Shown here: positions 9,504 to 50,830 of the stretch, one piece after another
How the letters are laid out: the number at the start of each line of letters is the position of its first letter
Numbering within the stretch: the first letter of the stretch is position 1
From: Oopsacas minuta
Taxonomy: Eukaryota > Animalia > Porifera
Assembly: GCA_024704765.1 (NCBI GenBank)
Contig: JAKMXF010000328.1
Span: forward strand, 247,260-311,259
Reading direction: 5' to 3'
DNA length: 64,000 nt
Notes under the pieces: model-generated
The model's database searches: none
What the model was told of the DNA's origin: nothing
What the model saw: the letters and a program-made list of their open reading frames with translations, nothing else
Made by a program: the position numbers and the translations under genes

Positions 9504-10219
9504 TTCACTTGTTTTAAGAATCTCAAAAATTTGTCCTACCCCTAACGTAACTGTACTAACTGTTGTTCTAAATAGTCTATCCGTTCAATTTGTTATTTTT
9601 GTTTTGCTATCAATTCAGAGATATATTCCATAAATATAAATATTACTCAACACAACCATTGAATCTAATTACCTGAAATTCAAGTCTTGTAATATTGAAT
9701 TCTTCGGTCTTAAAGAAATTATTGTGTCAATGGGTGTATAATGAGAGGATGAAGGTGTGTTGAATAAGTCAGCAGATGTGAGATCGAATTTGAATTGACA
9801 TGAGTCTGTTCCCCAACGACACAGGAGGTTGTGATATTTGAAGTTGTGTTTGTGTAAGTTCATAATTTGTAATCGTAACACACAATTTGTTAAGCGCCTA
9901 TACAATTTCGATCTAACATACTATTATGGATTAGTATGAAGAGAAACTTAGATCAGCTCGTGGATGTGACAGAATGATAACATTCACCGCCGAAATTGGG
10001 GGGCGCGCAAGGTTCTTATTCAGAACTCTTTAAAAGCAGCGGAGCGGATATTGCGAGAATATCCGATTCTCAAGCTGGTGTGTGTTTTGTTATTGTATAT
10101 TTTGTTGTATTTCGCAATTATGTCGGATGTTGTTTTATAAGTGTAAAATGAATCCATAGTATTGTGTTTGTGGGGTCTGGTAAAATGTTAAAAATTTAAA
10201 AACGTAAGTATTTGTACAC

Positions 10220-12250
10220 AATGTTAAAAGTATATAGAATCAAAATGTTCATTGCCAGCATTTCCGCTAAGATTGTAATATAATATACACAATTTTTGCC
10301 CTTCAAAATCGGATCACACTCCATAGGAGTGTCTAATAGGTGATGTACAAAATTGGGTAAAGTATTCCAATTTACACAATCAGCTACAGATATATCAACT
10401 CCAGCGATAGCACCTAGCATGGTTAATTTAACATTTGTGCCCCACTCATTTGATACAAAGACGGTATTTATATGTTCATTTAATTGTTCATTAAAAAAAC
10501 CAGAGGCTCCTCATAAGGTTGAAGTGATATTGAGGAGAGTTGATAAAATTATTTATCAAACTATGCTTTAGTATCTCAAAATTGTTTTCGGTACCAAAGA
10601 TAAAATGAGATAATGCAAGTATAGACAATTTCCATCAAGCTGTACTTTATATACTGAAGCAGGCTGACCAAAATACCTTACCAATTGTAACTGGAGTGAT
10701 GTATAGTAATTGCCAATTCTAAATAAGTTTGTCACGATTTGGCAAAATTGGTAAATGTAAGTCAATACTATGTTCAAGCCTTTGACGCATTGCGAGTGAA
10801 AATTTATTGACAAAACCATTTAAGAAGTAGTGAAACCATTCAAATCGTTCATGAATTATGCCATCAAATATACATTCCAGGTCAGATCTGGTCACCCTAT
10901 CATGAGCACCCATATCCATGGTATTGTCAATTACTTCCAATGGACTAAATGCCCCTAAAGTTAATTTATGAGGTTGACACCCCATAACTATCAATCCTAA
11001 TGGAATTCTGACCCTGCTTAATACAACTTAAAGCTGTCCACGGCTAAAAATAGCATCAGGGGATGGTAGATATATACCCACAGAATCCAAACTCTGCCCT
11101 TGACCTTTATTAATAGTTATGCAATAGGCTGAGCGGATAGGGAATTGCCTTCTCATGAGAAAATACGGAAGTTCAGACTCAGATGAAGTCAAGAGCATTC
11201 GTGGTATAAACATACGTTTACCTTTGTGTACCCTTGTGGCGATTGCTGCATCAATAACCCGATTTAAAAATGCCCTCACGATTAAGCGAGTACCATTACA
11301 TAGGCCTCATCGGGATCATGATTACGCCATAAAATAATTGAAGCAAATTGTTTCAAAATATGCGATGTGTGGTGGCATACCATTAGGTGTAATGGAATTT
11401 AGAAATTCTGAAGGAAAGTTGATAGCAGTGGATTCTTTCACAGACTCAGCACTCAATAGTGTTACTCCTCCCCCTGGCAGCTGATGAACAACATGGTTAT
11501 TAATTTGATCACATGTTTCATTCTTGGACACATTATTATTCCCCGACTAATAAAATCACAATTAGTGCAGTTTTCAAGAATATTCCATAGACGGAGTTTA
11601 CCAAGTCAGAGATATTACTACCGTATACTACAAATCTCGTTCTCAGGTTCAGTGCCTTCCCCGACCCTAAGTAGAAAATTAGAGAAATTACTCACTTCAA
11701 TGGCATTTTGAGATGACAATTTTTTGAAGCGCATATTTATAGTGAGTTTCATGACTTTTAACATGCCGCTAGAGGACTGACCAGTTTATGCATACTGATA
11801 TAATTTCAGGCCTCGAGCCATGTTTTACTACAGGAGGGATCTGACGGAAGTCACTTCCGAAAACCATAACTAGGCCACCGAATGGGAGATCACATGAACA
11901 AATGTCCCTCAAACTACGATCCACACATTCGGCAACATATTTATTGGACATACACGCTTCGTCCCAAACCAAAAGTTGTGTACGCATAATTAACTTTGCT
12001 AAAGCAGATTGCTTTGTAATGTTACAAACTGATAACTCATGAGTATCGATTGGAACTTTTACCCTAGAGTGTACCGTTCTCCCTCCTTGTATGAGTAGTG
12101 CAGCTATGCCACTACTTGCTATACCAAGGGGAAATTGGCCTGTGATCGAACTTTGGCTAGTAGCGTGTTATAAAGGAATGTTTTGCCTGTATCCCCAGGA
12201 TCATCGACAAAAAATTACTGAATCAAATATACCCAATTTATCTGAATTAA
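10220..12250 (-). mobile_element. Helitron remnant: PIF1 helicase followed by an OTU domain
   Basis: FFVDDPGDTGKTFLYN (~12170-12215), SSGIAALLIQGGRTVHS, LLVWDEACM, PFGGLVMVFGSDFRQIPPVV, RRQFPIRSAYCITINKGQGQSL and GQL*VVLSRV. Downstream come DGNCLY.ALSHFIFGTE, NEWGTNVKL and GNEHFDSI. Confidence 0.85.
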
Positions 12251-13449
12251 GTAATAGGCCAGATCGAGAAAAGTAAACATCGTCGGTTAAACTTCTACAT
12301 AAGGGAAAAGTTGCCTTTACTCTTTTCTAGGAAATGTGAAAGATAAATTTGAAAATATTTCGAGTTGACCCTTGCGGTTTTATATTTTGCTGAGTCACTT
12401 TCGCAAAATTGACCTTAAATTGCCCGAATTTCCTAACTCCTTTGGCATAGCCTCTTTAGATATATTATTTGGTAATAGTAAGTCACATATTTGCTATCGA
12501 ATGGTGTATTAGGCTAATTTCTATGTCCAAGGATACTCAAGTTATCAAGATATTTTTTGCATATTCTATCATACCCTAATAATATTACCCACCCTCCTAT
12601 TTTCCGAAGATTTGAAAATGCATAATTCTTACAAAAATGGCTATATACTCACCAAACTTAGTATAATTCTGTATCTATATCCAAATCCATCAATAGATTA
12701 CCACAAAGAAATTTACCAACTTTCCCTATCTCTTGCTCTTAACTTAGTTACCATTTATCTAGCATGGAATTATGGTCAATTATTGCATCTAAATATATAC
12801 TCAATCAAATCATTCATATTATAGAGTGATTATATTCATTTAATTTATGTATTTTTTTGAATATGGCAGAATACACGCTTAGTATTGTATTATTTCATCC
12901 TGTTTTGGTTATCCTGGACCCATTCCAGAAGATCTACTCCCAATAAAACTGGATCTATACAATCATTATGGCATGCTTAGAAATCATAAACTACTTTAAT
13001 AAAGGACTGTGGGCTGCCAGCTCGGGTCTTGGAACTTGGGTTCATTGTGCATTTATCGAGATCTCGTAAACGGCTATAGTTAGATACCCCAAATGTGTTA
13101 TTGTTGAATAGGAAGTTATACTTTTAGAGCCTATTGGTCATGTTGTCTTACCTGAAAGATTTGTGGAATGTGAGTTATGCGGTTTTCACACCTTTCCACA
13201 TTATGTTAATAATGTCAAAATATCGCTTCCAGGTAGAGTTAGACATGATAAAAGTGTTATTATACAATGGAATTCATGGGTAAGGAGTCATTTAGTCACA
13301 TTTCCTTACCTCAAATATTTGTGGGATGTGAGTTATGCGGTTTCACACCTCCATATAAGGTAAAATCGTGAATATTTCGTAATTGGTACGAGTTAGTTAT
13401 GACAAATGTATAATTATCTTGTAGTCTCTTAGTTTAGCAGAACATTAGC

Positions 13450-15215
13450 ATGCCAAAGCGTTGTGCAGCTTACAATTGTGGGGTGATTACATATGTGAAC
13501 CTCATACTCCAGCTGTAAGTTTTCCTACGGATGATGAACGGAAAAGCTGGATTGAGGTAATGCCAAATGATCGTGGTAGTCTCACTGATTGAAATGAAAT
13601 GTTTGTATGTTCATCACATTTTCAATGCAATGGGTCACTGTTAAAGGTGGAAAGCGGTCGATTGGACCTCCTACCTATTTTAAGGGAGTAGCAAAATCCT
13701 GCCTGAAGCAAACCTTAACATATCCCAGGCCAACAAAGAAGGCTTCGTCTGACGTACTTGAAAATTGCAAAAGAAATATCTAAATAAATTAGATAGGATT
13801 GATAAATTTTCAATTTTTACAAACGAGGCAGCAGCACGTTATACTTCGTTTAGTGTCAGAAGCAAATGCAGGGAATTGACAATGTTTAAGCAGGATGAAC
13901 TCGGAAGAAAGGTTGTTCAATTTATCAATATCAAGGAAATTGAATCACTTTTTGGTTTCTTGCACTTGGTGAAGGCAGAGAAAGATGGCTACGCGATTCC
14001 CAAACGTTATTTCAGTCTACAGAAGAATAACCTTCTTCATAGATGATCTCAAGTTGATGAAATACTTTCTACTGTGGAGAATTATCAAGCGTCTAATTCT
14101 GATCATTTGGCGAATGTTATGTACGAGTTAAAACAAATGACATCGGAAGTGTAAGAATGTCCACAATTTCAGTTCCTAGGGGTGCAACTCGACAACTTCT
14201 TGACACCCTACAATAAAATCTGCTACACAAAGCATCTGCTTATTCTCGCTGGAGAACTTCTATGTATCTCTCCAGCAGCATACAGGATGTTAAGAAATTC
14301 AAGAACTATTATCCTTCCTTGGGAGAGATTACTTCGAGATTAGATGACGCGCAGCTTTCCGAACAACGAATTGCCTCGCATATTTGAAGTTCTCAAACCA
14401 GAGCAGCGTTTTGTCAACATTTTGTTCGATGAAGTAAAGCTAATTACAACAAGTCGCTTCAGTGCAGGTCACATAATTGGCAATGCCAATGATGCGCCTA
14501 GTGAACAAGCCACCTCAGCCCTTTGTACCGAAGTTGTTTGTCATCAAGGCGGGCCACGTTTGGTATTTGGTATCCATCTAAAGAAGAACATAAATTCAAC
14601 GGATCTCCAAAAATAATTTTGTTGGAAATTATGGAAGTCATGAAAGATGGTGGTGTGAGACCAATATCCTTTATCTGTGATAACTGCCCGCTAAATCAAG
14701 GAGTATATAAATTACTTGGTGGTCCAGGGAGAGTGGTGTTGGATGGAATCGAAGTATTTCTTTTATGCACATCATGAAGAATTTGGGAAACAATTGGATA
14801 ACAGATAAACTTCAAGAGTTATCATTTGTGGAGGACGGTACAGAATACCTCGCATGTTGGAAAGATATTCAAGCACTTAATGAAGAGGACAAAAAACCCA
14901 CTACGACTCACAAAGCTTACACATACATCAGTATTTCCTAAACCTCTCCAACGACCGAGCATACCACTCGTCTGTCAAGTTTTTCACGAAAAGACTGTTG
15001 TAGCATTAAAAGCTTTGAAAAATACGGTAAATCTCCAGGAAGGGACTATTAGGTTAATCACAATGGTCACAAATTGGTTTAAAATGATGAATGTGAAGGA
15101 TAAGTTTGGGGCAATCAATCTATGGGATCCATTTGAGCTCCATGGACACTCAACTACGAAAACTTCGACATGCTGTTAGCAATGTGTGATGTGATAGGTT
15201 CCTGTCGCTGGAAGG
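13450..15215 (+). pseudogene. P-element/THAP9-like transposase, decayed (left arm copy)
   Basis: THAP-like MPKRCAAYNC...W...VCSSHF...PPTYF; NILFDEVKL; SFICDNCPLNQ; KLTHTSVFPKPLQR.SIPLVCQVFHEKT; NWFKMMNVK. Many frameshifts and stops; cut off at the central element. Confidence 0.85.
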
Positions 15216-15254
15216 TGACAAATACAGTCAAGGGACAAAAGTATTCGACCACAC

Positions 15255-16222
15255 GGGGGCGCTGCATTAGGTCGAATTTCGGTGTTGGCATTAGGTCGAA
15301 TTCCGTGTGTTGGCATTAGGTCGAATTGAAAATGTATCGAATTTAATATGTATGCATTAGGTCGAAATTTATATGTATGCATTAGGTCGAATTTCGTGTG
15401 TTGGCATTAGGTCGAATTTTATATGTATGCATTAGGTCGAATTTCGCGTGTTGGCATTAGGTCGAATTTTATATGTATGCATTAGGTCGAATTCCGTGTG
15501 TTGGCATTAGATCGAATTAAGACGTTGTGATAGATCGAATTTATTTAGCTATGTTGTCGATAGATCGATATAGAAAATGGATTTATAGAAACGAGAAAGT
15601 GATAGGACATTTTATTGTATTAATTATAAACCCGTACCATTGGGAGGGGATTAGGAATTTTGTTCACTACCTTATTGGTCTGGGAGTTTTCATTTGTACT
15701 CGTTACTCAGCTACCTAGGGGTGGGGATGTGGAGTCCATGCTAATTTTGTGTATGGATGGACTTTTGTTGGATTAATTATTAGAAAAGTTTGCGAAATGG
15801 CGGATCGCTGGATTTTTTGCTTTTAAAAATTTAAGGAAGCTTTCAGTGTTTCTCAAAAAATATGAATTGGCCTTAAAGATGAGATATTCATAGCTAATAT
15901 TCATTCGCTCTATCCTCAACTTCGCTAGAATAGTATTCGACCTAATGCATACATATTTAATCCGACCTAATGCCAACATACGAAATTCGACCCAATGCAC
16001 ACATATAAAATTCGACCTAATGCCAACACACGGATTTCGACCTAATGCATACATATAAAATTCGACCTAATGCCAACACACGAAATTCGACCTAATGCAT
16101 ACATATAAATTTCGACCTAATGCATACATATTAAATTCGATACATTTTCAATTCGACCTAATGCCAACACACGGAATTCGACCTAATGCCAACACCGAAA
16201 TTCGACCTAATGCAGCGCCCCC
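15255..16222. mobile_element. Non-autonomous foldback (MULE-like) element with TIRs made of 25-bp subrepeats
   Basis: Ends GGGGGCGCTGCATTAGGTCGAA / TTCGACCTAATGCAGCGCCCCC, about 10 copies of GCATTAGGTCGAA per side, and a ~410 bp unique core. Similar in architecture to 55437-55891. The exact terminus is uncertain; an alternative is TA|CAGTCAAGGG at ~15228. Confidence 0.6.
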
Positions 16223-16261
16223 GTGTGGTCGAATACTTTTGTCCCTTGACTGTATTTGTCA

Positions 16262-18027
16262 CCTTCCAGCGACAGGAACCTATCACATCACACATTGCTA
16301 ACAGCATGTCGAAGTTTTCGTAGTTGAGTGTCCATGGAGCTCAAATGGATCCCATAGATTGATTGCCCCAAACTTATCCTTCACATTCATCATTTTAAAC
16401 CAATTTGTGACCATTGTGATTAACCTAATAGTCCCTTCCTGGAGATTTACCGTATTTTTCAAAGCTTTTAATGCTACAACAGTCTTTTCGTGAAAAACTT
16501 GACAGACGAGTGGTATGCTCGGTCGTTGGAGAGGTTTAGGAAATACTGATGTATGTGTAAGCTTTGTGAGTCGTAGTGGGTTTTTTGTCCTCTTCATTAA
16601 GTGCTTGAATATCTTTCCAACATGCGAGGTATTCTGTACCGTCCTCCACAAATGATAACTCTTGAAGTTTATCTGTTATCCAATTGTTTCCCAAATTCTT
16701 CATGATGTGCATAAAAGAAATACTTCGATTCCATCCAACACCACTCTCCCTGGACCACCAAGTAATTTATATACTCCTTGATTTAGCGGGCAGTTATCAC
16801 AGATAAAGGATATTGGTCTCACACCACCATCTTTCATGACTTCCATAATTTCCAACAAAATTATTTTTGGAGATCCGTTGAATTTATGTTCTTCTTTAGA
16901 TGGATACCAAATACCAAACGTGGCCCGCCTTGATGACAAACAACTTCGGTACAAAGGGCTGAGGTGGCTTGTTCACTAGGCGCATCATTGGCATTGCCAA
17001 TTATGTGACCTGCACTGAAGCGACTTGTTGTAATTAGCTTTACTTCATCGAACAAAATGTTGACAAAACGCTGCTCTGGTTTGAGAACTTCAAATATGCG
17101 AGGCAATTCGTTGTTCGGAAAGCTGCGCGTCATCTAATCTCGAAGTAATCTCTCCCAAGGAAGGATAATAGTTCTTGAATTTCTTAACATCCTGTATGCT
17201 GCTGGAGAGATACATAGAAGTTCTCCAGCGAGAATAAGCAGATGCTTTGTGTAGCAGATTTTATTGTAGGGTGTCAAGAAGTTGTCGAGTTGCACCCCTA
17301 GGAACTGAAATTGTGGACATTCTTACACTTCCGATGTCATTTGTTTTAACTCGTACATAACATTCGCCAAATGATCAGAATTAGACGCTTGATAATTCTC
17401 CACAGTAGAAAGTATTTCATCAACTTGAGATCATCTATGAAGAAGGTTATTCTTCTGTAGACTGAAATAACGTTTGGGAATCGCGTAGCCATCTTTCTCT
17501 GCCTTCACCAAGTGCAAGAAACCAAAAAGTGATTCAATTTCCTTGATATTGATAAATTGAACAACCTTTCTTCCGAGTTCATCCTGCTTAAACATTGTCA
17601 ATTCCCTGCATTTGCTTCTGACACTAAACGAAGTATAACGTGCTGCTGCCTCGTTTGTAAAAATTGAAAATTTATCAATCCTATCTAATTTATTTAGATA
17701 TTTCTTTTGCAATTTTCAAGTACGTCAGACGAAGCCTTCTTTGTTGGCCTGGGATATGTTAAGGTTTGCTTCAGGCAGGATTTTGCTACTCCCTTAAAAT
17801 AGGTAGGAGGTCCAATCGACCGCTTTCCACCTTTAACAGTGACCCATTGCATTGAAAATGTGATGAACATACAAACATTTCATTTCAATCAGTGAGACTA
17901 CCACGATCATTTGGCATTACCTCAATCCAGCTTTTCCGTTCATCATCCGTAGGAAAACTTACAGCTGGAGTATGAGGTTCACATATGTAATCACCCCACA
18001 ATTGTAAGCTGCACAACGCTTTGGCAT
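16262..18027 (-). pseudogene. P-element/THAP9-like transposase, decayed (right arm mirror copy)
   Basis: Its ORF translations are identical to those of 13450-15215. Confidence 0.85.
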
Positions 18028-19240
18028 GCTAATGTTCTGCTAAACTAAGAGACTACAAGATAATTATACATTTGTCATAACTAACTCGTACCAATTACGA
18101 AATATTCACGATTTTACCTTATATGGAGGTGTGAAACCGCATAACTCACATCCCACAAATATTTGAGGTAAGGAAATGTGACTAAATGACTCCTTACCCA
18201 TGAATTCCATTGTATAATAACACTTTTATCATGTCTAACTCTACCTGGAAGCGATATTTTGACATTATTAACATAATGTGGAAAGGTGTGAAAACCGCAT
18301 AACTCACATTCCACAAATCTTTCAGGTAAGACAACATGACCAATAGGCTCTAAAAGTATAACTTCCTATTCAACAATAACACATTTGGGGTATCTAACTA
18401 TAGCCGTTTACGAGATCTCGATAAATGCACAATGAACCCAAGTTCCAAGACCCGAGCTGGCAGCCCACAGTCCTTTATTAAAGTAGTTTATGATTTCTAA
18501 GCATGCCATAATGATTGTATAGATCCAGTTTTATTGGGAGTAGATCTTCTGGAATGGGTCCAGGATAACCAAAACAGGATGAAATAATACAATACTAAGC
18601 GTGTATTCTGCCATATTCAAAAAAATACATAAATTAAATGAATATAATCACTCTATAATATGAATGATTTGATTGAGTATATATTTAGATGCAATAATTG
18701 ACCATAATTCCATGCTAGATAAATGGTAACTAAGTTAAGAGCAAGAGATAGGGAAAGTTGGTAAATTTCTTTGTGGTAATCTATTGATGGATTTGGATAT
18801 AGATACAGAATTATACTAAGTTTGGTGAGTATATAGCCATTTTTGTAAGAATTATGCATTTTCAAATCTTCGGAAAATAGGAGGGTGGGTAATATTATTA
18901 GGGTATGATAGAATATGCAAAAAATATCTTGATAACTTGAGTATCCTTGGACATAGAAATTAGCCTAATACACCATTCGATAGCAAATATGTGACTTACT
19001 ATTACCAAATAATATATCTAAAGAGGCTATGCCAAAGGAGTTAGGAAATTCGGGCAATTTAAGGTCAATTTTGCGAAAGTGACTCAGCAAAATATAAAAC
19101 CGCAAGGGTCAACTCGAAATATTTTCAAATTTATCTTTCACATTTCCTAGAAAAGAGTAAAGGCAACTTTTCCCTTATGTAGAAGTTTAACCGACGATGT
19201 TTACTTTTCTCGATCCGGCCTATTAGATAGCGATAGTTAA

Positions 19241-19776
19241 GTTGGTATTCACAAATGAAAGTAAAAACTAAGTAAATACTTAGTTTTTCTGAAATCTAAG
19301 TAAAACTGAGTAAATACTTAGTTTCCCTACGGAACTAAGTATTTTTAAGTCTAGTCTTGAGGTCACTTAACTCATCATATTTTTATTATAAGAGCGTACT
19401 TTCCTAGGTTAGAAGATTTATCAAATTTAAGATTCCTTCTTGTCATCTAATTCACTTTTATTAAGTAAATTCGACTGCTGAAGTGCGTAATGATTTTACA
19501 TACTTTCGAAAGTTTATCTACTTGTTCACAAAAAGGTTAATATCTCTGTGCATATTTCAACAAACTATACAATACTTAGTTATACTCGTTGGAAACCAAG
19601 TATTTGAACTTATACTTAACTAATACTTAGTTTTACTTAGTTTTCTTTCAAAACTAAGTATATACTAAGTATTGGTTAAGTATACGTGCATTGATGAGAA
19701 CTTAGCAAAAACTAAGATTTACTTAGTTTCGAGTTAAGTTTAAGTTTAATTCAAGTAGTTTAGTGAATAAGGCCCC
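19241..19776. mobile_element. MITE-like element rich in ACTAAGT/ACTTAGT motifs (PIF/Harbinger-like end)
   Basis: Right end GTGAATAAGGCCCC. The left counterpart GGTATTCACAAA is degenerate. Oppositely oriented ACTAAGTA/TACTTAGT motif clusters lie at both ends. Confidence 0.5.
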
Positions 19777-19777
19777 T

Positions 19778-19935
19778 GATGACGTAATAATTCCATGATG
19801 AGTTATCATAATTTGTACATGTGTGAATTTTTGATCCAAGACTCGAAAAGTCTAAAATACCCCTGTATGCAATATATCAGCCTGGGGAAAATGGAGTTTC
19901 TTCAATCAATCCTGGACATACGCCTACAAACATAC
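19778..19935 (-). repeat. 5' fragment of the Helentron-like family seen at 4808-5500
   Basis: GTGTGAATTTTTGATCCAAGACTC...GTTTCTTCAATCAATCCTGGACATAC matches 5108-5222. Confidence 0.7.
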
Positions 19936-21368: not shown

Positions 21369-23764
21369 TAGGGATTCTAATCTGGCCCTGGGATCCCGGG
21401 ATTAAGTATTCCAATCACGGGATTCTCAAACGAATTGATCACACTTCAAATATTGGGTTCCATTGAATTATATCGCGTTAACTTAATTGGGAAGCTGCAG
21501 AAATTATATGTAACAATGGCAATCTGATGTTCGCAGTACTCATAATATTATATCACCAATTTATACACATAAAGTATACTACATATTACTATAGTACATT
21601 CTTAACTGAACCGATATTGTAATTCTTTGGCTACATGGCAGTGAACCACGTTAGATTTCGAGAATTTAAGGGTGCACCAATTTGGACACATTATAAGCGA
21701 TCATCATGTGGAAACCTGGCAGAATGCAAGATTTGTGAGAAGAATCTAAAGTGTCATGGAGGATCAACCAAAGGTTTGCATGTCCACCTTAAATCTTGTC
21801 ATAATGTCGATTTACTAATACGTACTATTTTAGAGAGTGATATCGAAAACAAAGAACAAGAATCCAACTGAAACACAAAAGAAATTGAAAAGTTTTATAA
21901 ATGATGCCGGCCTTCCAGCAGTGCTGGCCAGAATGACCGCTTATGGCGGCCTTTCTTTTAAAATATATATTACTTCGCAGGACTTACGGAAATTTCTTAC
22001 CGCACTAGGACACTCTGTACCTAAATTTATCACCAGTATAAGAGAATTAGTTATGCAATACGGACAACAAATACGTCAAAAAAACACCCGAAAGTTAGCT
22101 AATCTTAAATCAGAAGGAAACAAATTTGGCCTTACATTGCATGAGTGGACATCACTGGGTAATAGAAGATATAGATACTTGAATATAAATGTATATGGGA
22201 GAGGTTATCTTATAAATCTTGGGTTAGTGAGATTAAAGGGAATTTTCACTGCAGAAATATCTTCGGATGCAATCTCTAATAAGCTAAGTGAATTTGGTTT
22301 AGATTATCGTCCAGATATTGTTGGCATCGCAACAAATGGTTGTGCGATGATGAAAAAACTAGTTAGAATAATACCTCCATTCCAACAATTATGCTACGCA
22401 CATGGACTCCAGCTAGTCTTACAAGACATATTCTATCGAAGCAAGCCTAAATCCAAGAATTAATCATTTCTACTACTGATCCTGATGAAGAGGAAGGATC
22501 ATTGGATAATGATGAAGAAAGTGGTGGTTTAATTGTTTTAAATACCCCTGGTCAGGAGATTTCATTAGAACTATGCGACGATATTATTGACACTGGCCAA
22601 ATACGTGGAAATGTGAAACAATTTAAGCGATCGCCATTGAAATTGAGACATTACAAATATATGTCAGAGAAACCCATCCCAATGGATTAAACTTAATCCT
22701 TGATTGTAAGACTCGATGGAGTTCTCTACTAGATATGTTATCAAAAATTATTCAACTTAAGCTACCAGTTCAAAAGGCTCTATTGGACCTTGGACCAAGT
22801 GCGGATCTAAGCGATCATGATTTCATCAAGATTGAGGCAATCGCTAAAGTTCTCACTCCAATCAATATTGCAGTAGAAGCTCTATGTAGGCGTGATGCTA
22901 CCATAATAACTGCGGAAGTAACAATAAAGTTTCTATTAAATGAGCTCAGTGTGTCTCCTTCACATTAGGCGAATTATTGAAGAGAGATACTCGATGCATT
23001 GGTTGTTATTCAACATCTCCACAATCCTCAAGCTCAAATTGAGAAAAAAGTAACAATTAACAGATTTTGTTGCGAGTTATTCTTAAGAATTAGGGAAAAT
23101 GTGGATGCTGAAGAAAATTTGAATGAAGCACAATCCACAACTACTTCAGGAAATAATTCTGAACATTCGGATCCAGGAAATGTATCCGTCCAAGAGAAAC
23201 TTCAAATTGCAATAAATGCTTCTCTATAAAATCCCCAAAAGAGTTCCCAAAAGAACTTACCACTATCAACTCATCTCAAGTATGAGCTAACAATCGCTGA
23301 ACAGACAGGGAAAAGAGATAATTTTTTGGAAGAAATTTATCAATTGCTATACATCATCCTACCAACTTCAGGCTAAATCATTCTCTTCAGCAGCGTACCT
23401 ATGCAATAGGTTTAGAAGTAGGCTCAGCGATGAAACAATAGATGCTTTGGTGTTTATTAGAAATAACATCACTAATTAGTAATAGTACACGCTTTGGGTA
23501 TCGAATCGTGATACTTTGTCGTATTTCCATTTGTTTCTATGCTACTTTCATTATTATTCTCATTCATTTTCCATTAAATTCAGTACTGAAGAACGTGAAT
23601 ATATACTCAATAATCGCCGTACAACCGAAAGCAAGCAAATTACTTGTAACTATTACAAAGAATAATCCATCAATCATAGTATTAGTATAAGCTATGTACA
23701 TATATAGAAGTAAAAAATTTAATATATTAATTAAGCATGCTCAATCCCGGGATTGGAGTCCCTA
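21369..23764 (+). mobile_element. hAT (Ac/ZBED1-like) transposon, decayed
   Basis: Imperfect TIRs TAGGGATTCTAATC / GATTGGAGTCCCTA with CCCGGGATT subterminal motifs. No TSD was recognised. Confidence 0.8.
21635..23500 (+). pseudogene. BED-finger hAT transposase, frameshifted
   Basis: IWTHY..AECKIC..GGSTKGLHVHLKSCH (BED finger); HEWTSLGNRRY; CYAHGLQLV; DCKTRWSSLLDML; C-terminal RLSDETIDALVFIR. Confidence 0.85.
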
Positions 23765-47861: not shown

Positions 47862-50830
47862 ATGCCCAGTGCCTGTTCTGCCCCGGGTTGCACAAGTAAT
47901 TATTACCCAGATGACAGAGTGTATATATTCAGAATGCCAAAGATTCCACCCGAACTTAAACAAGCCTGGATACGCGCTCTCCACCGTGAAGATATTGATC
48001 GTCTCAAAGTCGTTTATGAATGTATCAAACATTTCCGTGAAGAAGATGTTGACTATTTTCATAAAGTTCCCAATGGTGACGGTACTTTCACTAGTGTACC
48101 TCGCGATAAACTTAAGCTGAAAGAAGGGGCAATTCCCAGTTTACTTCCCAGTTTCCCCTCTTATTATTCATCAACATCGACAAGCAAACGTACTCGTTTG
48201 TTTTATAAATCAAAAGAGAAAGAAATGTTGAATCAAACCATTCAGCTTAGTCTAAAATCTGAGAGTGAGGCCAAACACAAATTCATCATTAGAAATTTAC
48301 AGGATCTGAAAGCTAAGTTGAATTATATTGTGTTACCAGACAATTGGTTAGTATGGCATACTGACAATTCTAGTACACTGTTTATTCTNNNNNNNNNNNN
48401 NNNNNNNNNNNNNNNNNNNNNNNNNNNNNNNNNNNNNNNNNNNNNNNNNNNNNNNNNNNNNNNNNNNNNNNNNNNNNNNNNNNNNNNNNNNNNNNNNNNN
48501 NNNNNNNNNNNNNNNNNNNNNNNNNNNNNNNNNNNNNNNNNNNNNNNNNNNNNNNNNNNNNNNNNNNNNNNNNNNNNNNNNNNNNNNNNNNNNNNNNNNN
48601 NNNNNNNNNNNNNNNNNNNNNNNNNNNNNNNNNNNNNNNNNNNNNNNNNNNNNNNNNNNNNNNNNNNNNNNNNNNNNNNNNNNNNNNNNNNNNNNNNNNN
48701 NNNNNNNNNNNNNNNNNNNNNNNNNNNNNNNNNNNNNNNNNNNNNNNNNNNNNNNNNNNNNNNNNNNNNNNNNNNNNNNNNNNNNNNNNNNNNNNNNNNN
48801 NNNNNNNNNNNNNNNNNNNNNNNNNNNNNNNNNNNNNNNNNNNNNGGATAGCGAAAACTATTCTTCCTCAGTTATAGCTAAGCTCCAATTTATCCTCTGT
48901 CAATTAGACAATATATTTATTCCAAAGAACAGGCGAAGGTACAATATAATTACACAAGTCATGTCAATTAAGACTCATCTCTTTTCTCCAGCATGTTATG
49001 CATATCTCCAGGGTTTAAAGTGTCTTTCTCTACCTATCTCTCCCAAGCTACTTCTTCCTTCAGTTCATTGGAGAGAAATGTTATAGTTCAAATGGACGAA
49101 ATACACATTAAATCTGATATTACTTATAAAGGAGGGAAGATCTTTGCTCCTAATTTGGACCCAGAGGACCCAACCAGAACTGTGTTTGCGGTAATGATAT
49201 CTAGCTTACATGAGAAATGGTCTTGTATTTCACGTTTATTACCATGTGGTTCTATTTCCGCGAAAAGGCATTTCCCATCATCAAAGAGTGTATCATTGAT
49301 ATTGAGAATTGTGGTTTACGTGTACAGGTAATTTCAACTGACAATTATCCTTTGAATGTAAATCTTTTCAAGCTATTTTCTCTGAGTGGCAAATTCGAAA
49401 CTAGGGTACCTCACCCATTTGATCCTACTAGATTTCTGTTCCTCACGTTCGATTTTGTTCATATTTAAAAAGGATACGTAATAATTGGTTGAATCAGAAG
49501 AATTTTGATAAGACAATGTATTACCTCAAGTTGGAAGATTTTGAGATTGATAAATGCCAGTACCCCCTTTGTCTCCATTCAGCATCTTTTCAAGATGTAA
49601 GCCTGCTATACAGCTCTGAAAGAGGAAGTTTAGCGAAACTGGCTCCTCAGTTAACAGTGAAAGCCTGTTTTCCTTCTAGTATAGAAAGACAGGATGTCGA
49701 ATTGGTTCTGAAGGTTTTTAATGGTCTAACACTATCCGCTCTTGAGATTCCATATGAAAAACGTTGTGAAGAATATCGCAATAATACCTCTACGTTTGTT
49801 AGAATCCTTCCTACTCTGTGGAAAATATTCAATGTTAGTACACCCTCCAAAGGCATACGTTGAAATGACAATCTCTCAACACCCTTGATCTTACACGATG
49901 AGCGTTTCATATATTTAGCTCGTATAGTGTATTGGCTAGATGCTTGGCGGTCATCACCTGGAACATCGGGTAAATTGAATAAGCAAACGTATACTAGTTT
50001 AAGACACGCTTGTATTGCTTTAGAACAGATAACAACCTATCTAACTGAGTCATGTAGATTTTCTTATGTTTTGTCTGCATTTCTGCAAACAGACCCATTG
50101 GAACATCATTTTGGACTCTATCGTATGATGGCTGGTTCGAATTATCAAATTTCCTACATTCAAATTCTTGAATCCGAGCGTAGTCTTTAGCTCTCTAACA
50201 TTCTAAAAAATGTTTTCTGACCAACAGGACTCTTGTCAATCTATACATACTTTTGTCAAATCTTTTACTTCACCCTTTACTACTTCTAGTGATGACCAAA
50301 TAGATCTTGAGCCATATCTTGATGGAATTGGTGACGTATTATCAGTTGAATACACTTAGCAGATACTCCAGTCGTTAGCTTTTATCGGAGGATATTCGGT
50401 CTATAAATTCTTGAAAAGGTTTCAAGAGTGTAGATTATGCACTGATACGCTAACTTATGATAAAGAATTAATTCCTGACCCGTGATTCAATTTCTCAATT
50501 CAAGCTCTTGCAATTAACAGATCGATGGTGGCTCAAATATCTATCTGAGCCTTTTCTTAGCTCTGTCATTACTCTGGAAGATTCTGTTTGCTATTGAGGA
50601 CAATGATCATTTGGCGAATCTACTTGTACACGGTCCAGCTAGGAAAATATTAGTTGAGCTCATATTGATATACATGGAAGATGATGCAAGTGTTGATATC
50701 TGGAAATCAAATTGTTCTATCTGTAGTGTTACTAGATGGGATATCTTACGTAAACTTATTTTTACTACTGCTAATTGCTTTCTTGCCAACAAGATTAAGA
50801 ACGATAATTCACTTGTAAATGATATCACGC
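47862..50830 (+). pseudogene. P-element/THAP9-like transposase (second family), spanning an assembly gap
   Basis: THAP MPSACSAPGC..AWIRAL..CIKHF..LKEGAIPSLLP; VQMDEIHIK; STDNYPLNVNLF; FDFVHI*KRIRNNW; FLQTDPLEHHFGLYRMMAGSNY. Confidence 0.88.
48389..48845. other. Assembly gap (457 N)
   Basis: Run of N. Confidence 1.

What the first reader, a model, noticed from the sequence alone, without database searches (positions are those of the whole stretch)
12252..19225. ~7 kb palindrome with ~3.2 kb arms carrying identical copies of an already dead transposase
Seen: the arms mirror each other with a constant coordinate sum (31477), no indels, and one mismatch noticed near the outer end. Both arms carry the same frameshifts and stops in the P-like transposase, so the duplication (or homogenisation) came after its decay. 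The left flank is a Helitron helicase cut just upstream of motif I, and the right flank does not continue it. No direct TSD was found beyond a palindromic TA, so this is not a simple insertion. Established: short inverted repeats next to a double-strand break can seed large palindromes, and alternative transposition can create flanking inverted duplications. Inference: the central foldback element seeded a very recent palindrome, or arm-to-arm conversion maintains it. An assembly or chimeric-read fold-back is equally possible.
Basis: partly seen in the sequence, partly recalled or inferred. Interest (0 to 1): 0.75.

Follow-up and report, generated by a model that had tools for sequence, protein, structure and literature searches.

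The report
Mirror-copied nest of sponge transposons
The 7-kb palindrome is real in the assembly: four jumping genes sit one inside another in what is probably a glass sponge genome, and one half was very recently rewritten as a mirror copy of the other, most likely by a DNA-repair slip of a kind known from fly transposons.

Summary
The arms are 12252-15520 and 15957-19225, with no indels. There are 10 mismatches, not one: one at 12261 and nine in the innermost 79 bp.

- Outer 730 bp of each arm: the ends of an abundant foldback transposon, family A (about 880-bp arms, 8-bp target duplication).
- Next 2.24 kb: the 5' part of a decayed P-superfamily element, B.
- Next 33 bp: the tip of a MITE, E.
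- Centre: a 968-bp foldback MITE, C, with 25-bp tandem repeats.

So the outer ends and the axis were already inverted repeats. What is new is a 3,180-bp tract with no mismatches (12262-15441 against 16036-19215) copied in mirror image between them. It overwrote the rest of E, B and A.

Best explanation: break or gap repair that primed on the wrong arm. This is the same kind of event as the "TIR extension" described for Galileo in Drosophila. It happened within about the last 0.6% (under 3%) of B's residence time.

The flanks are chimeric: a Helitron on the left and a truncated MITE on the right, with no matching target duplication. That part is unexplained.

An assembly artefact is less likely (about 12%) but cannot be excluded without reads. 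The scan has already noted many other foldback transposon derivatives in this genome.

The parts
12255..12984 (+). Left arm of foldback transposon A: its first ~733 nt, terminus TAGGCC
   Evidence: More than 40 genomic copies at 85-92% identity, mostly as inverted pairs. Full copies have ~880-bp arms and a ~118-bp loop. 8-bp target duplications in 6 of 6 copies, one with a mismatch.
18493..19222 (-). Right arm of A, a mirror of 12255-12984, terminus GGCCTA
   Evidence: It differs from the left arm only at 19216, the 7th nt from the terminus.
12985..15224 (+). 5' ~2.24 kb of P-superfamily element B: its 435-bp inverted end plus the N-terminal ~60% of a decayed transposase reading towards the centre
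   Evidence: Matches positions 1-2246 of a 3,624-bp family with 435-bp inverted ends and an 8-bp target duplication. Family copies hit Pfam PF21787 (34.9 bits) and PF21788 (34.0 bits), both above their cut-offs. The 3' 1.38 kb of B is missing on both sides.
16253..18492 (-). Mirror copy of the same B fragment
   Evidence: No difference from the left copy in a 2,288-column alignment.
15222..15254 (+). 33-nt tip of MITE family E (mirror at 16223-16255)
   Evidence: The 31-mer is 100% identical at 12 or more loci, several as inverted pairs ~890 bp apart. An E copy in L022 carries on with unrelated E interior after nt 33. The window holds only these two occurrences.
15255..16222 (.). Foldback MITE C: arms 15255-15520 and 15957-16222 with 25-bp tandem repeats, loop 15521-15956. 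This is the axis of the palindrome.
   Evidence: At least 40 genomic hits. Family termini fall consistently at 15253-15255 and 16222-16224. Tandem repeats. An 8-bp target duplication was seen in L023.
12262..15441 (+). Freshly copied tract with no mismatch; its partner is 16036-19215
   Evidence: It spans parts of A, B, E and the outer 187 nt of C's arm.
15442..15520 (+). Inner part of C's arm that was not overwritten: 70 of 79 nt match its partner 15957-16035
   Evidence: The 88.6% identity resembles the 81-83% arm identity of other C copies.
12261..12261 (+). The only outer mismatch: A here, against the family consensus G kept at 19216
   Evidence: It is nt 7 of the element. If placed at random in the tract, p is about 0.002.
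10100..12254 (-). Left flank: decayed Helitron helicase, cut at the A terminus
   Evidence: PF05970, E 1.5e-22. GxGKT motif close to the junction. Paralogues on C244 and C296 are continuous across the junction.
19223..19780 (+). Right flank: repeat family D, lacking its first ~45-50 nt at the A terminus
   Evidence: Three D copies on different contigs share ~45 nt upstream of the junction point. That upstream piece is nowhere else in the window.

Best explanation
A foldback transposon (A) had taken in a P-like element (B). B had taken in a MITE (E), and E had taken in a foldback MITE (C).

Later a double-strand break or excision gap inside this nest was repaired by copying (synthesis-dependent strand annealing). 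One 3' end primed on the wrong arm. That was possible because the locus already held two inverted-repeat pairs: A's long ends and C's arms. Synthesis ran between them and made a reverse-complement copy of one side (A 1-733, B 1-2246, E 1-33, outer C arm). This copy replaced about 2.7 kb on the other side: the rest of E, the 3' 1.38 kb of B, and A's inner arms and loop. The result is an A element whose inverted ends grew from ~880 bp to 3.27 kb.

Shown:
- the nest and its one-sided truncations;
- the sharp tract edges;
- the recency of the copying.

Inferred:
- the repair pathway;
- which side was the template;
- the trigger. A P-type excision leaves 17 nt of each end on the donor flanks, which would explain why nt 7 escaped copying.

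The mismatched flanks need a separate event, probably earlier: ectopic exchange between two A copies, or a one-ended (hybrid) insertion.
For: - Composite arms with family boundaries at 12984/12985, ~15222 and 15254/15255.
- A, B and E are each cut on the same side and then mirrored.
- No mismatch in 3,180 nt, bounded inside by 9 mismatches in 79 nt and outside by a mismatch at nt 7.
- Other C copies have arms only 81-83% alike, so the window's perfect outer C arm was overwritten.
- The window's A has 37 private changes shared by both arms against 1 in a single arm. Four other old A copies total 65 against 87 (Fisher p = 1e-10).
- B's 55 private substitutions and 11 private indel columns are shared by both arms, which puts the copying at about 0.6% of B's residence time, upper bound about 3%.
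- No second copy of the A-B junction exists in the genome, so this was a local event and not a mobile family.
- Recruitment of inverted internal sequence into the inverted ends, and copies with unlike target duplications, are described for the P-superfamily foldback Galileo (PMC3573991).
- The 17-nt staggered P cleavage is described in PMC7776569.
Against: - No reads were available, so the structure rests on a hybrid de Bruijn-graph assembly (SPAdes with corrected PacBio reads, then Pilon; PMC10280926). Such an assembly could collapse small differences between the arms.
- The flanks are chimeric and the 8-bp flanks match at only 5 of 8 positions. A purely internal repair does not predict this, so a second event must be assumed.
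- The superfamily that mobilises A is unknown. An 8-bp target duplication fits P and hAT alike, so the 17-nt argument is only suggestive.
- A single later point mutation could by chance sit at nt 7.
Confidence: 0.58

Rival explanations
1. The mirror duplication is old, and its arms are kept identical by continuing arm-to-arm gene conversion, as in sex-chromosome palindromes. On this reading the lack of mismatches says nothing about age.
For: - Arms of every A copy are closer to each other than to other copies, and two copies have 0-2 differences in ~880 nt.
- Earlier unchecked notes of this scan report arms evolving together in 2.8-kb MULE palindromes of this genome.
Against: - Four older A copies carry as many single-arm changes as shared ones (65 against 87). 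Conversion therefore does not keep ~880-bp arms clean here, whereas the window shows 37 against 1.
- Conversion would not be expected to stop sharply 79 nt short of the loop.
- The first duplication still needs the repair event of the main explanation.
Confidence: 0.15
2. Assembly artefact. The graph assembler left C's right arm along the reverse complement of the left flank instead of the true right flank, then rejoined the real right end of A. It skipped about 2.7 kb and produced a false palindrome.
For: - The assembly is a k<=99 de Bruijn-graph hybrid with scaffolding, Pilon and GapFiller (PMC10280926).
- C's outer arms (over 180 nt identical) would collapse in such a graph.
- A false path gives exactly zero mismatches.
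- Contigs made only of transposon sequence could have been dropped by the taxonomic filter.
Against: - The path would have no read support, while corrected PacBio reads and mate pairs were available.
- Six A copies with ~880-bp arms that are 96-100% alike were assembled with matching 8-bp target duplications, five perfect and one with a mismatch.
- An A copy with an unmirrored 2.3-kb insert was assembled correctly.
- No B 3' fragment begins at the breakpoint, and the predicted ancestral C-E junction is absent from all 365 scaffolds.
- There are no Ns in the region; the only gap is at 48389-48845.
- For C's outer arm to be identical in the graph, it would itself have to be unusually uniform (81-83% in other copies).
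Confidence: 0.12
3. One combined chromosomal event. A break next to C, fold-back priming and replication of the whole left side, or an alternative (hybrid-end) transposition using two equivalent A ends, created the palindrome and joined its new end to the D repeat, deleting the Helitron's other half.
For: - Both flanks are repeats cut exactly at A's termini with no shared target duplication.
- The palindrome runs 3 nt beyond the termini (TAA/TTA).
- Palindromes seeded by short inverted repeats next to a break, and rearrangements by alternative transposition, are established (my own knowledge of the yeast, mammalian and maize Ac/Ds literature; not checked here).
Against: - Fold-back replication has no reason to stop 3 nt past a transposon terminus.
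- The 3 nt are equally the first 3 nt of the expected target duplication TTAAGTAA.
- The mismatch at nt 7 argues that the outermost bases of one end are old DNA, not new synthesis.
- The reciprocal products were not found. The Helitron's other half exists only as paralogues.
Confidence: 0.13

Closest known systems
TIR extension in Galileo (P-superfamily foldback-like transposon of Drosophila; PMC3573991)
   Same: - Long inverted ends that make up most of the element.
- Internal sequence duplicated in inverted orientation next to an end, which lengthens it (441 bp and 121 bp cases are described).
- Tandem repeats inside arms.
- Copies bounded by unlike target duplications.
- Break repair after excision proposed as the cause.
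   Different: - About 2.5 kb is recruited here, not 0.1-0.45 kb.
- The recruited DNA is three foreign nested elements, not the element's own interior.
- The inner edge sits in a second, nested foldback element.
- Target duplication is 8 bp, against Galileo's 7 bp.
- The host is a hexactinellid sponge.
- It is a single locus, not a propagated subfamily.
Large palindromes seeded by a short inverted repeat next to a double-strand break (Tetrahymena rDNA, yeast and mammalian gene-amplification models; from my own knowledge)
   Same: - The axis is a pre-existing inverted repeat whose asymmetric spacer survives as the loop.
- The new arms are exact copies.
   Different: Those palindromes run on to a chromosome end or a second break. 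This one is capped by a second pre-existing inverted repeat and stays within one transposon.
Mu killer of maize (PMC3440606)
   Same: [quoted passage not shown]
- Transcription through it would give a kilobase-scale hairpin RNA.
   Different: - No transcript or small-RNA data here.
- Every B copy examined is already decayed, so there may be nothing left to silence.
- Mu killer belongs to the Mutator superfamily.
Arm-to-arm gene conversion in primate Y-chromosome palindromes (from my own knowledge)
   Same: Kilobase arms more than 99.9% identical around a unique spacer.
   Different: Those palindromes persist for millions of years and carry functional genes. Here the arms hold dead transposons, and the sharp tract edges point to one event.

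Membership tests
P-element superfamily (element B) | Transposase with a TNP-like RNase H fold interrupted by a GTP-binding insertion domain | tested here: met
   PF21787 (34.9 bits, cut-off 24.6) and PF21788 (34.0 bits, cut-off 24.8) hit ORF pieces of family copies L005 and L003. The window's own shorter ORF pieces gave no hit.
P-element superfamily (element B) | 8-bp target site duplication and terminal inverted repeats | tested here: met
   L005 ATTAGTAT on both sides; L003 CAACGGAC/CAATGGAC; inverted ends of 435 bp at 99.8% identity.
P-element superfamily (element B) | N-terminal THAP DNA-binding domain | tested here: inconclusive
   No THAP hit in the ORF pieces scanned. The N-terminal region is fragmented and was not scanned in all frames.
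Foldback-type transposons (elements A and C) | Element made almost wholly of long inverted arms around a short loop, present in many copies with target duplications | tested here: met
   A: ~880-bp arms, ~118-bp loop, more than 40 hits, 8-bp duplications in 6 of 6 copies, one with a mismatch. C: ~266-bp arms, 436-bp loop, at least 40 hits.
Foldback-type transposons (elements A and C) | Tandem subrepeats inside the arms | tested here: met
   C has 25-bp and 50-bp tandem units at 15264-15518 and 15935-16214. A's arms were not examined for subrepeats.
Galileo-type TIR extension | Internal sequence present twice in inverted orientation, contiguous with the original inverted end, with the termini kept | tested here: met
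   A's termini are intact at 12255 and 19222. B, E and outer C are mirrored with no mismatch.
Galileo-type TIR extension | Element still flanked by a matching target duplication (a purely internal event) | tested here: not met
   TTAAGTAA against TTAGATAG, 5 of 8. The flanks belong to two unrelated truncated repeats.
Break-induced palindrome at a short inverted repeat | The palindrome continues through unique flanking DNA beyond any repeat | tested here: not met
   Complementarity stops 3 nt outside the transposon termini.
Mu killer-like hairpin silencer | Hairpin transcript and small RNAs that silence an active family | not testable with these tools
   No expression data. All six B copies compared are decayed to a similar degree, with 39-76 private substitutions each.

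The most novel reading that the evidence does not exclude
The locus is a natural hairpin-RNA source. Each arm keeps B's 5' inverted end and the transposase reading towards the centre, so read-through would give a ~2.2-3.2-kb perfect double-stranded RNA. That RNA would target the P-like family B and the abundant foldback family A, as Mu killer does in maize. Together with the many other foldback transposon derivatives noted in this genome, it would mean that repair-made palindromes are a regular route to transposon silencing in an early-branching animal.
Probability: 0.07. Interest if true: 0.7.

Novelty: new member of a known kind. Interest (0 to 1): 0.38.

Why it matters
This is a clean natural record of how a transposon's inverted ends can grow several-fold in one step. 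Both edges of the copied tract are still readable: one lies inside a nested foldback's arm, the other 7 nt from the outer terminus. The lost material can be inferred from sister copies.

It shows that nested inverted repeats can steer repair synthesis into making kilobase palindromes. Such palindromes are fragile, prone to recombination and able to form hairpins.

It adds a hexactinellid sponge to a phenomenon documented mainly in Drosophila and maize. Taken with other notes of this scan, foldback formation may be unusually common in this compact genome. It does not reveal a new kind of system.

Tried and rejected
- **Empty site.** I looked for a paralogue in which the Helitron runs across the insertion point into the window's right flank. 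Two paralogues (C244, C296) cross the point, but what follows them is not in the window. A search with that continuation found only paralogues and unrelated repeats. A simple insertion is rejected.
- **D repeat ending at the junction.** I asked whether D simply ends there, so that two termini abut. Rejected: three D copies share ~45 nt upstream of that point.
- **The '22 unknown bases' between B and C.** They are the 33-nt tip of another MITE family, E.
- **Right arm of A from a second A copy (ectopic exchange or mis-join).** Rejected for the present sequence. Other copies differ by 8% or more, while the arms differ at one base. An older exchange that was later overwritten remains possible.
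- **Orphan remains of the supposedly skipped sequence.** Every B 3' fragment in the genome is continuous across the breakpoint or cut elsewhere. The predicted C-E junction has no match.
- **Pfam on the window's own short ORF pieces.** No P-family hit; longer ORFs of sister copies were needed.
- **Further genomic loci.** E copies and further A copies were therefore judged from hit tables only.
Full report
**1. Observation**

The inverted repeat is there as described. The arms are 12252-15520 and 15957-19225: 3,269 nt, ungapped, 436 nt apart. A base-by-base comparison at coordinate sum 31477 finds 10 mismatches. One is at 12261/19216. Nine lie in 15442-15520, within the 25-bp tandem-repeat zone next to the loop. 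Between them, 3,180 nt pair without a mismatch. The only run of N in the window is far away, at 48389-48845.

**2. Source**

The window is C328:247260-311259 of a 61,460,524-bp, 365-scaffold genome. Earlier scan notes name the glass sponge Oopsacas minuta. The published assembly of that species has 365 scaffolds, about 61 Mb and 36% G+C (PMC10280926), and the window averages about 36% G+C. I take the identification as probable.

That assembly was built with SPAdes (k up to 99) from Illumina reads and Canu-corrected PacBio reads, followed by SSPACE, Pilon and GapFiller.

**3. Anatomy: four nested transposons**

A search of the whole genome with one arm shows that the arm is composite.

- **Family A.**
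  - Arm positions 1-733 belong to an abundant family (more than 40 hits at 85-92% identity) that mostly occurs as inverted pairs.
  - Complete copies are foldback elements with ~880-bp arms and a ~118-bp loop.
  - Their termini are TAGGCC...GGCCTA, and all six copies inspected have an 8-bp target duplication, one with a single mismatch.
  - In the window the termini are at 12255 and 19222. Only A 1-733 is present, on both sides.
- **Family B.**
  - Arm positions 734 to about 2973-2979 match a 3,624-bp family with 435-bp inverted ends and 8-bp duplications.
  - ORF pieces of sister copies hit the P-transposase domains PF21787 and PF21788 above their cut-offs.
  - Only B 1-2246 is present, and the 3' 1.38 kb is missing on both sides.
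- **Family E.**
  - The next 33 nt (15222-15254) are the tip of a MITE family. Its 31-mer is 100% identical at a dozen or more loci, several as inverted pairs ~890 bp apart.
  - An E copy in L022 continues with unrelated interior after nt 33.
- **Family C.**
  - The centre, 15255-16222, is a foldback MITE with at least 40 hits.
  - It has consistent termini and an 8-bp duplication in L023.

So A contains B, B contains E, and E contains C. A, B and E are each truncated on the same side and then mirrored.

**4. What is new in the locus**

The outer ends of the palindrome (A's termini) and its axis (C) were already inverted repeats. The new feature is the mirror copy between them. Three results show that one discrete tract was overwritten.

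- **C's arms.** Their outer 187 nt are 100% alike here, while the inner 79 nt are 88.6% alike. In other C copies the outer arms are only 81-83% alike.
- **A's arms.** The window's A copy is the most diverged of seven compared. It has 37 private substitutions shared by both arms and only 1 in a single arm. Four other old copies total 65 shared against 87 single-arm (Fisher p = 1e-10).
- **B's private changes.** Both arms share all 55 private substitutions and 11 private indel columns.

With one difference in 2 x 3,190 nt, against 55 private substitutions in 2,246 nt, the copying falls within about 0.6% of B's residence time (upper bound about 3%). The A-B junction occurs nowhere else in the genome, so this is a local event and not a mobile composite.

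**5. Mechanism (inferred)**

The tract edges lie inside one pre-existing inverted repeat (C's arm, at 15441/15442) and 7 nt from the end of the other (A's terminus). This is what copy-repair would leave if a 3' end primed on the wrong arm, was extended, and the new strand was then captured by the homologous repeat at the far side.

One concrete version is gap repair after excision of A.
- P-type transposases leave 17 nt of each end on the donor flanks (PMC7776569).
- If both flank ends invaded the same end of the sister template, the two new strands could anneal only at C's arms.
- That gives exactly the observed structure and leaves the outermost bases as old DNA.
- The single mismatch at nt 7 fits this. 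Placed at random in the tract, its position has p of about 0.002.

A break near A's loop, with fold-back priming at C and capture in A's other arm, fits equally well. Whether A is moved by a P-type enzyme is unknown, because an 8-bp duplication also fits hAT.

**6. Flanks (unexplained)**

- **Left flank.** It is a decayed Helitron helicase on the minus strand (PF05970), with its GxGKT motif about 15 codons from the junction. Paralogues on C244 and C296 run straight across the junction point.
- **Right flank.** It is a family-D repeat that lacks its first ~45-50 nt.
- **Missing halves.** Neither is in the window. The Helitron continuation was sought in the whole genome and found only as paralogues.
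- **Target duplication.** The 8-bp flanks match at 5 of 8 positions.

The element therefore bridges two unrelated sequences. Galileo copies bounded by unlike duplications are attributed to exchange between copies (PMC3573991). If that happened here, it came before the overwriting, which would have erased the arm divergence that usually betrays it. A one-ended or hybrid insertion, or one combined event, remains possible.

**7. Artefact question**

A graph assembler could in principle leave C's right arm along the reverse complement of the left flank. Several results argue against this.

- The same assembly resolved six A copies, whose ~880-bp arms are 96-100% alike, with matching 8-bp duplications, five perfect and one with a mismatch.
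- It resolved an A copy with an unmirrored 2.3-kb insert.
- No B 3' fragment starts at the breakpoint.
- The predicted ancestral C-E junction is absent.
- Long reads were available to the assembler.

On the other side, a contig made only of transposon sequence could have been dropped by the project's taxonomic filter, and bubble collapse could hide a few real differences between the arms. I put the artefact at about 12%.

**8. Comparison and novelty**

The closest described case is TIR extension in Galileo, where 121-441 bp of internal sequence is duplicated in inverted orientation next to a long inverted end. This locus is a larger and unusually legible example, in which foreign nested elements are recruited. 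It sits in a sponge.

Its layout also resembles Mu killer: an inverted partial transposase together with its inverted end (PMC3440606). No expression data exist, and every B copy compared is decayed.

Earlier notes of this scan list many foldback derivatives of MULE, Chapaev and P/Galileo-like elements in the same genome. Those notes are unchecked leads, but they suggest that the process recurs here.

**Verdict.** This is a new member of a known kind, of moderate interest.

Noticed in passing
window 15222-15254 and 16223-16255; also C77:148195-149112, C66:247058-247968, C53:30099-31018, C44:109688-110607, C9:108160-109079: MITE family E. Its 31-nt tips are 100% identical at a dozen or more loci and form inverted pairs ~890 bp apart, which suggests a very young or still active family. 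Its tip contains ATTCGACC, the reverse complement of the GGTCGAAT core of family C's 25-bp repeats, so the two families may share one transposase-binding word.
   Followed up: partly
L015 (C122:545391-547275) and L016 (C188:682547-684422): Two family-A copies have arms with 0-2 differences in ~880 nt, although the two copies differ from each other by 3.2%. Either they inserted recently or their arms were re-synchronised.
   Followed up: partly
L057 (C199:354121-358258): An A copy with a 2.3-kb unmirrored insertion about 720 nt from one end, close to where B entered the window's copy (733). This may be an insertion hot spot in A's arm, or chance. The insert was not identified.
   Followed up: no
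window 21635-22463 (+): Two adjacent ORFs. The first has a BED-like zinc-finger pattern (CxxC...HxxxxxH). The second is 208 aa with no Pfam hit. This may be a decayed hAT-type transposase.
   Followed up: no
window 10100-12254 (-): Decayed Helitron helicase with frameshifts.
   Followed up: no
window 48389-48845: A run of 457 N: a scaffold gap or a withheld stretch. It is unrelated to the palindrome.
   Followed up: no
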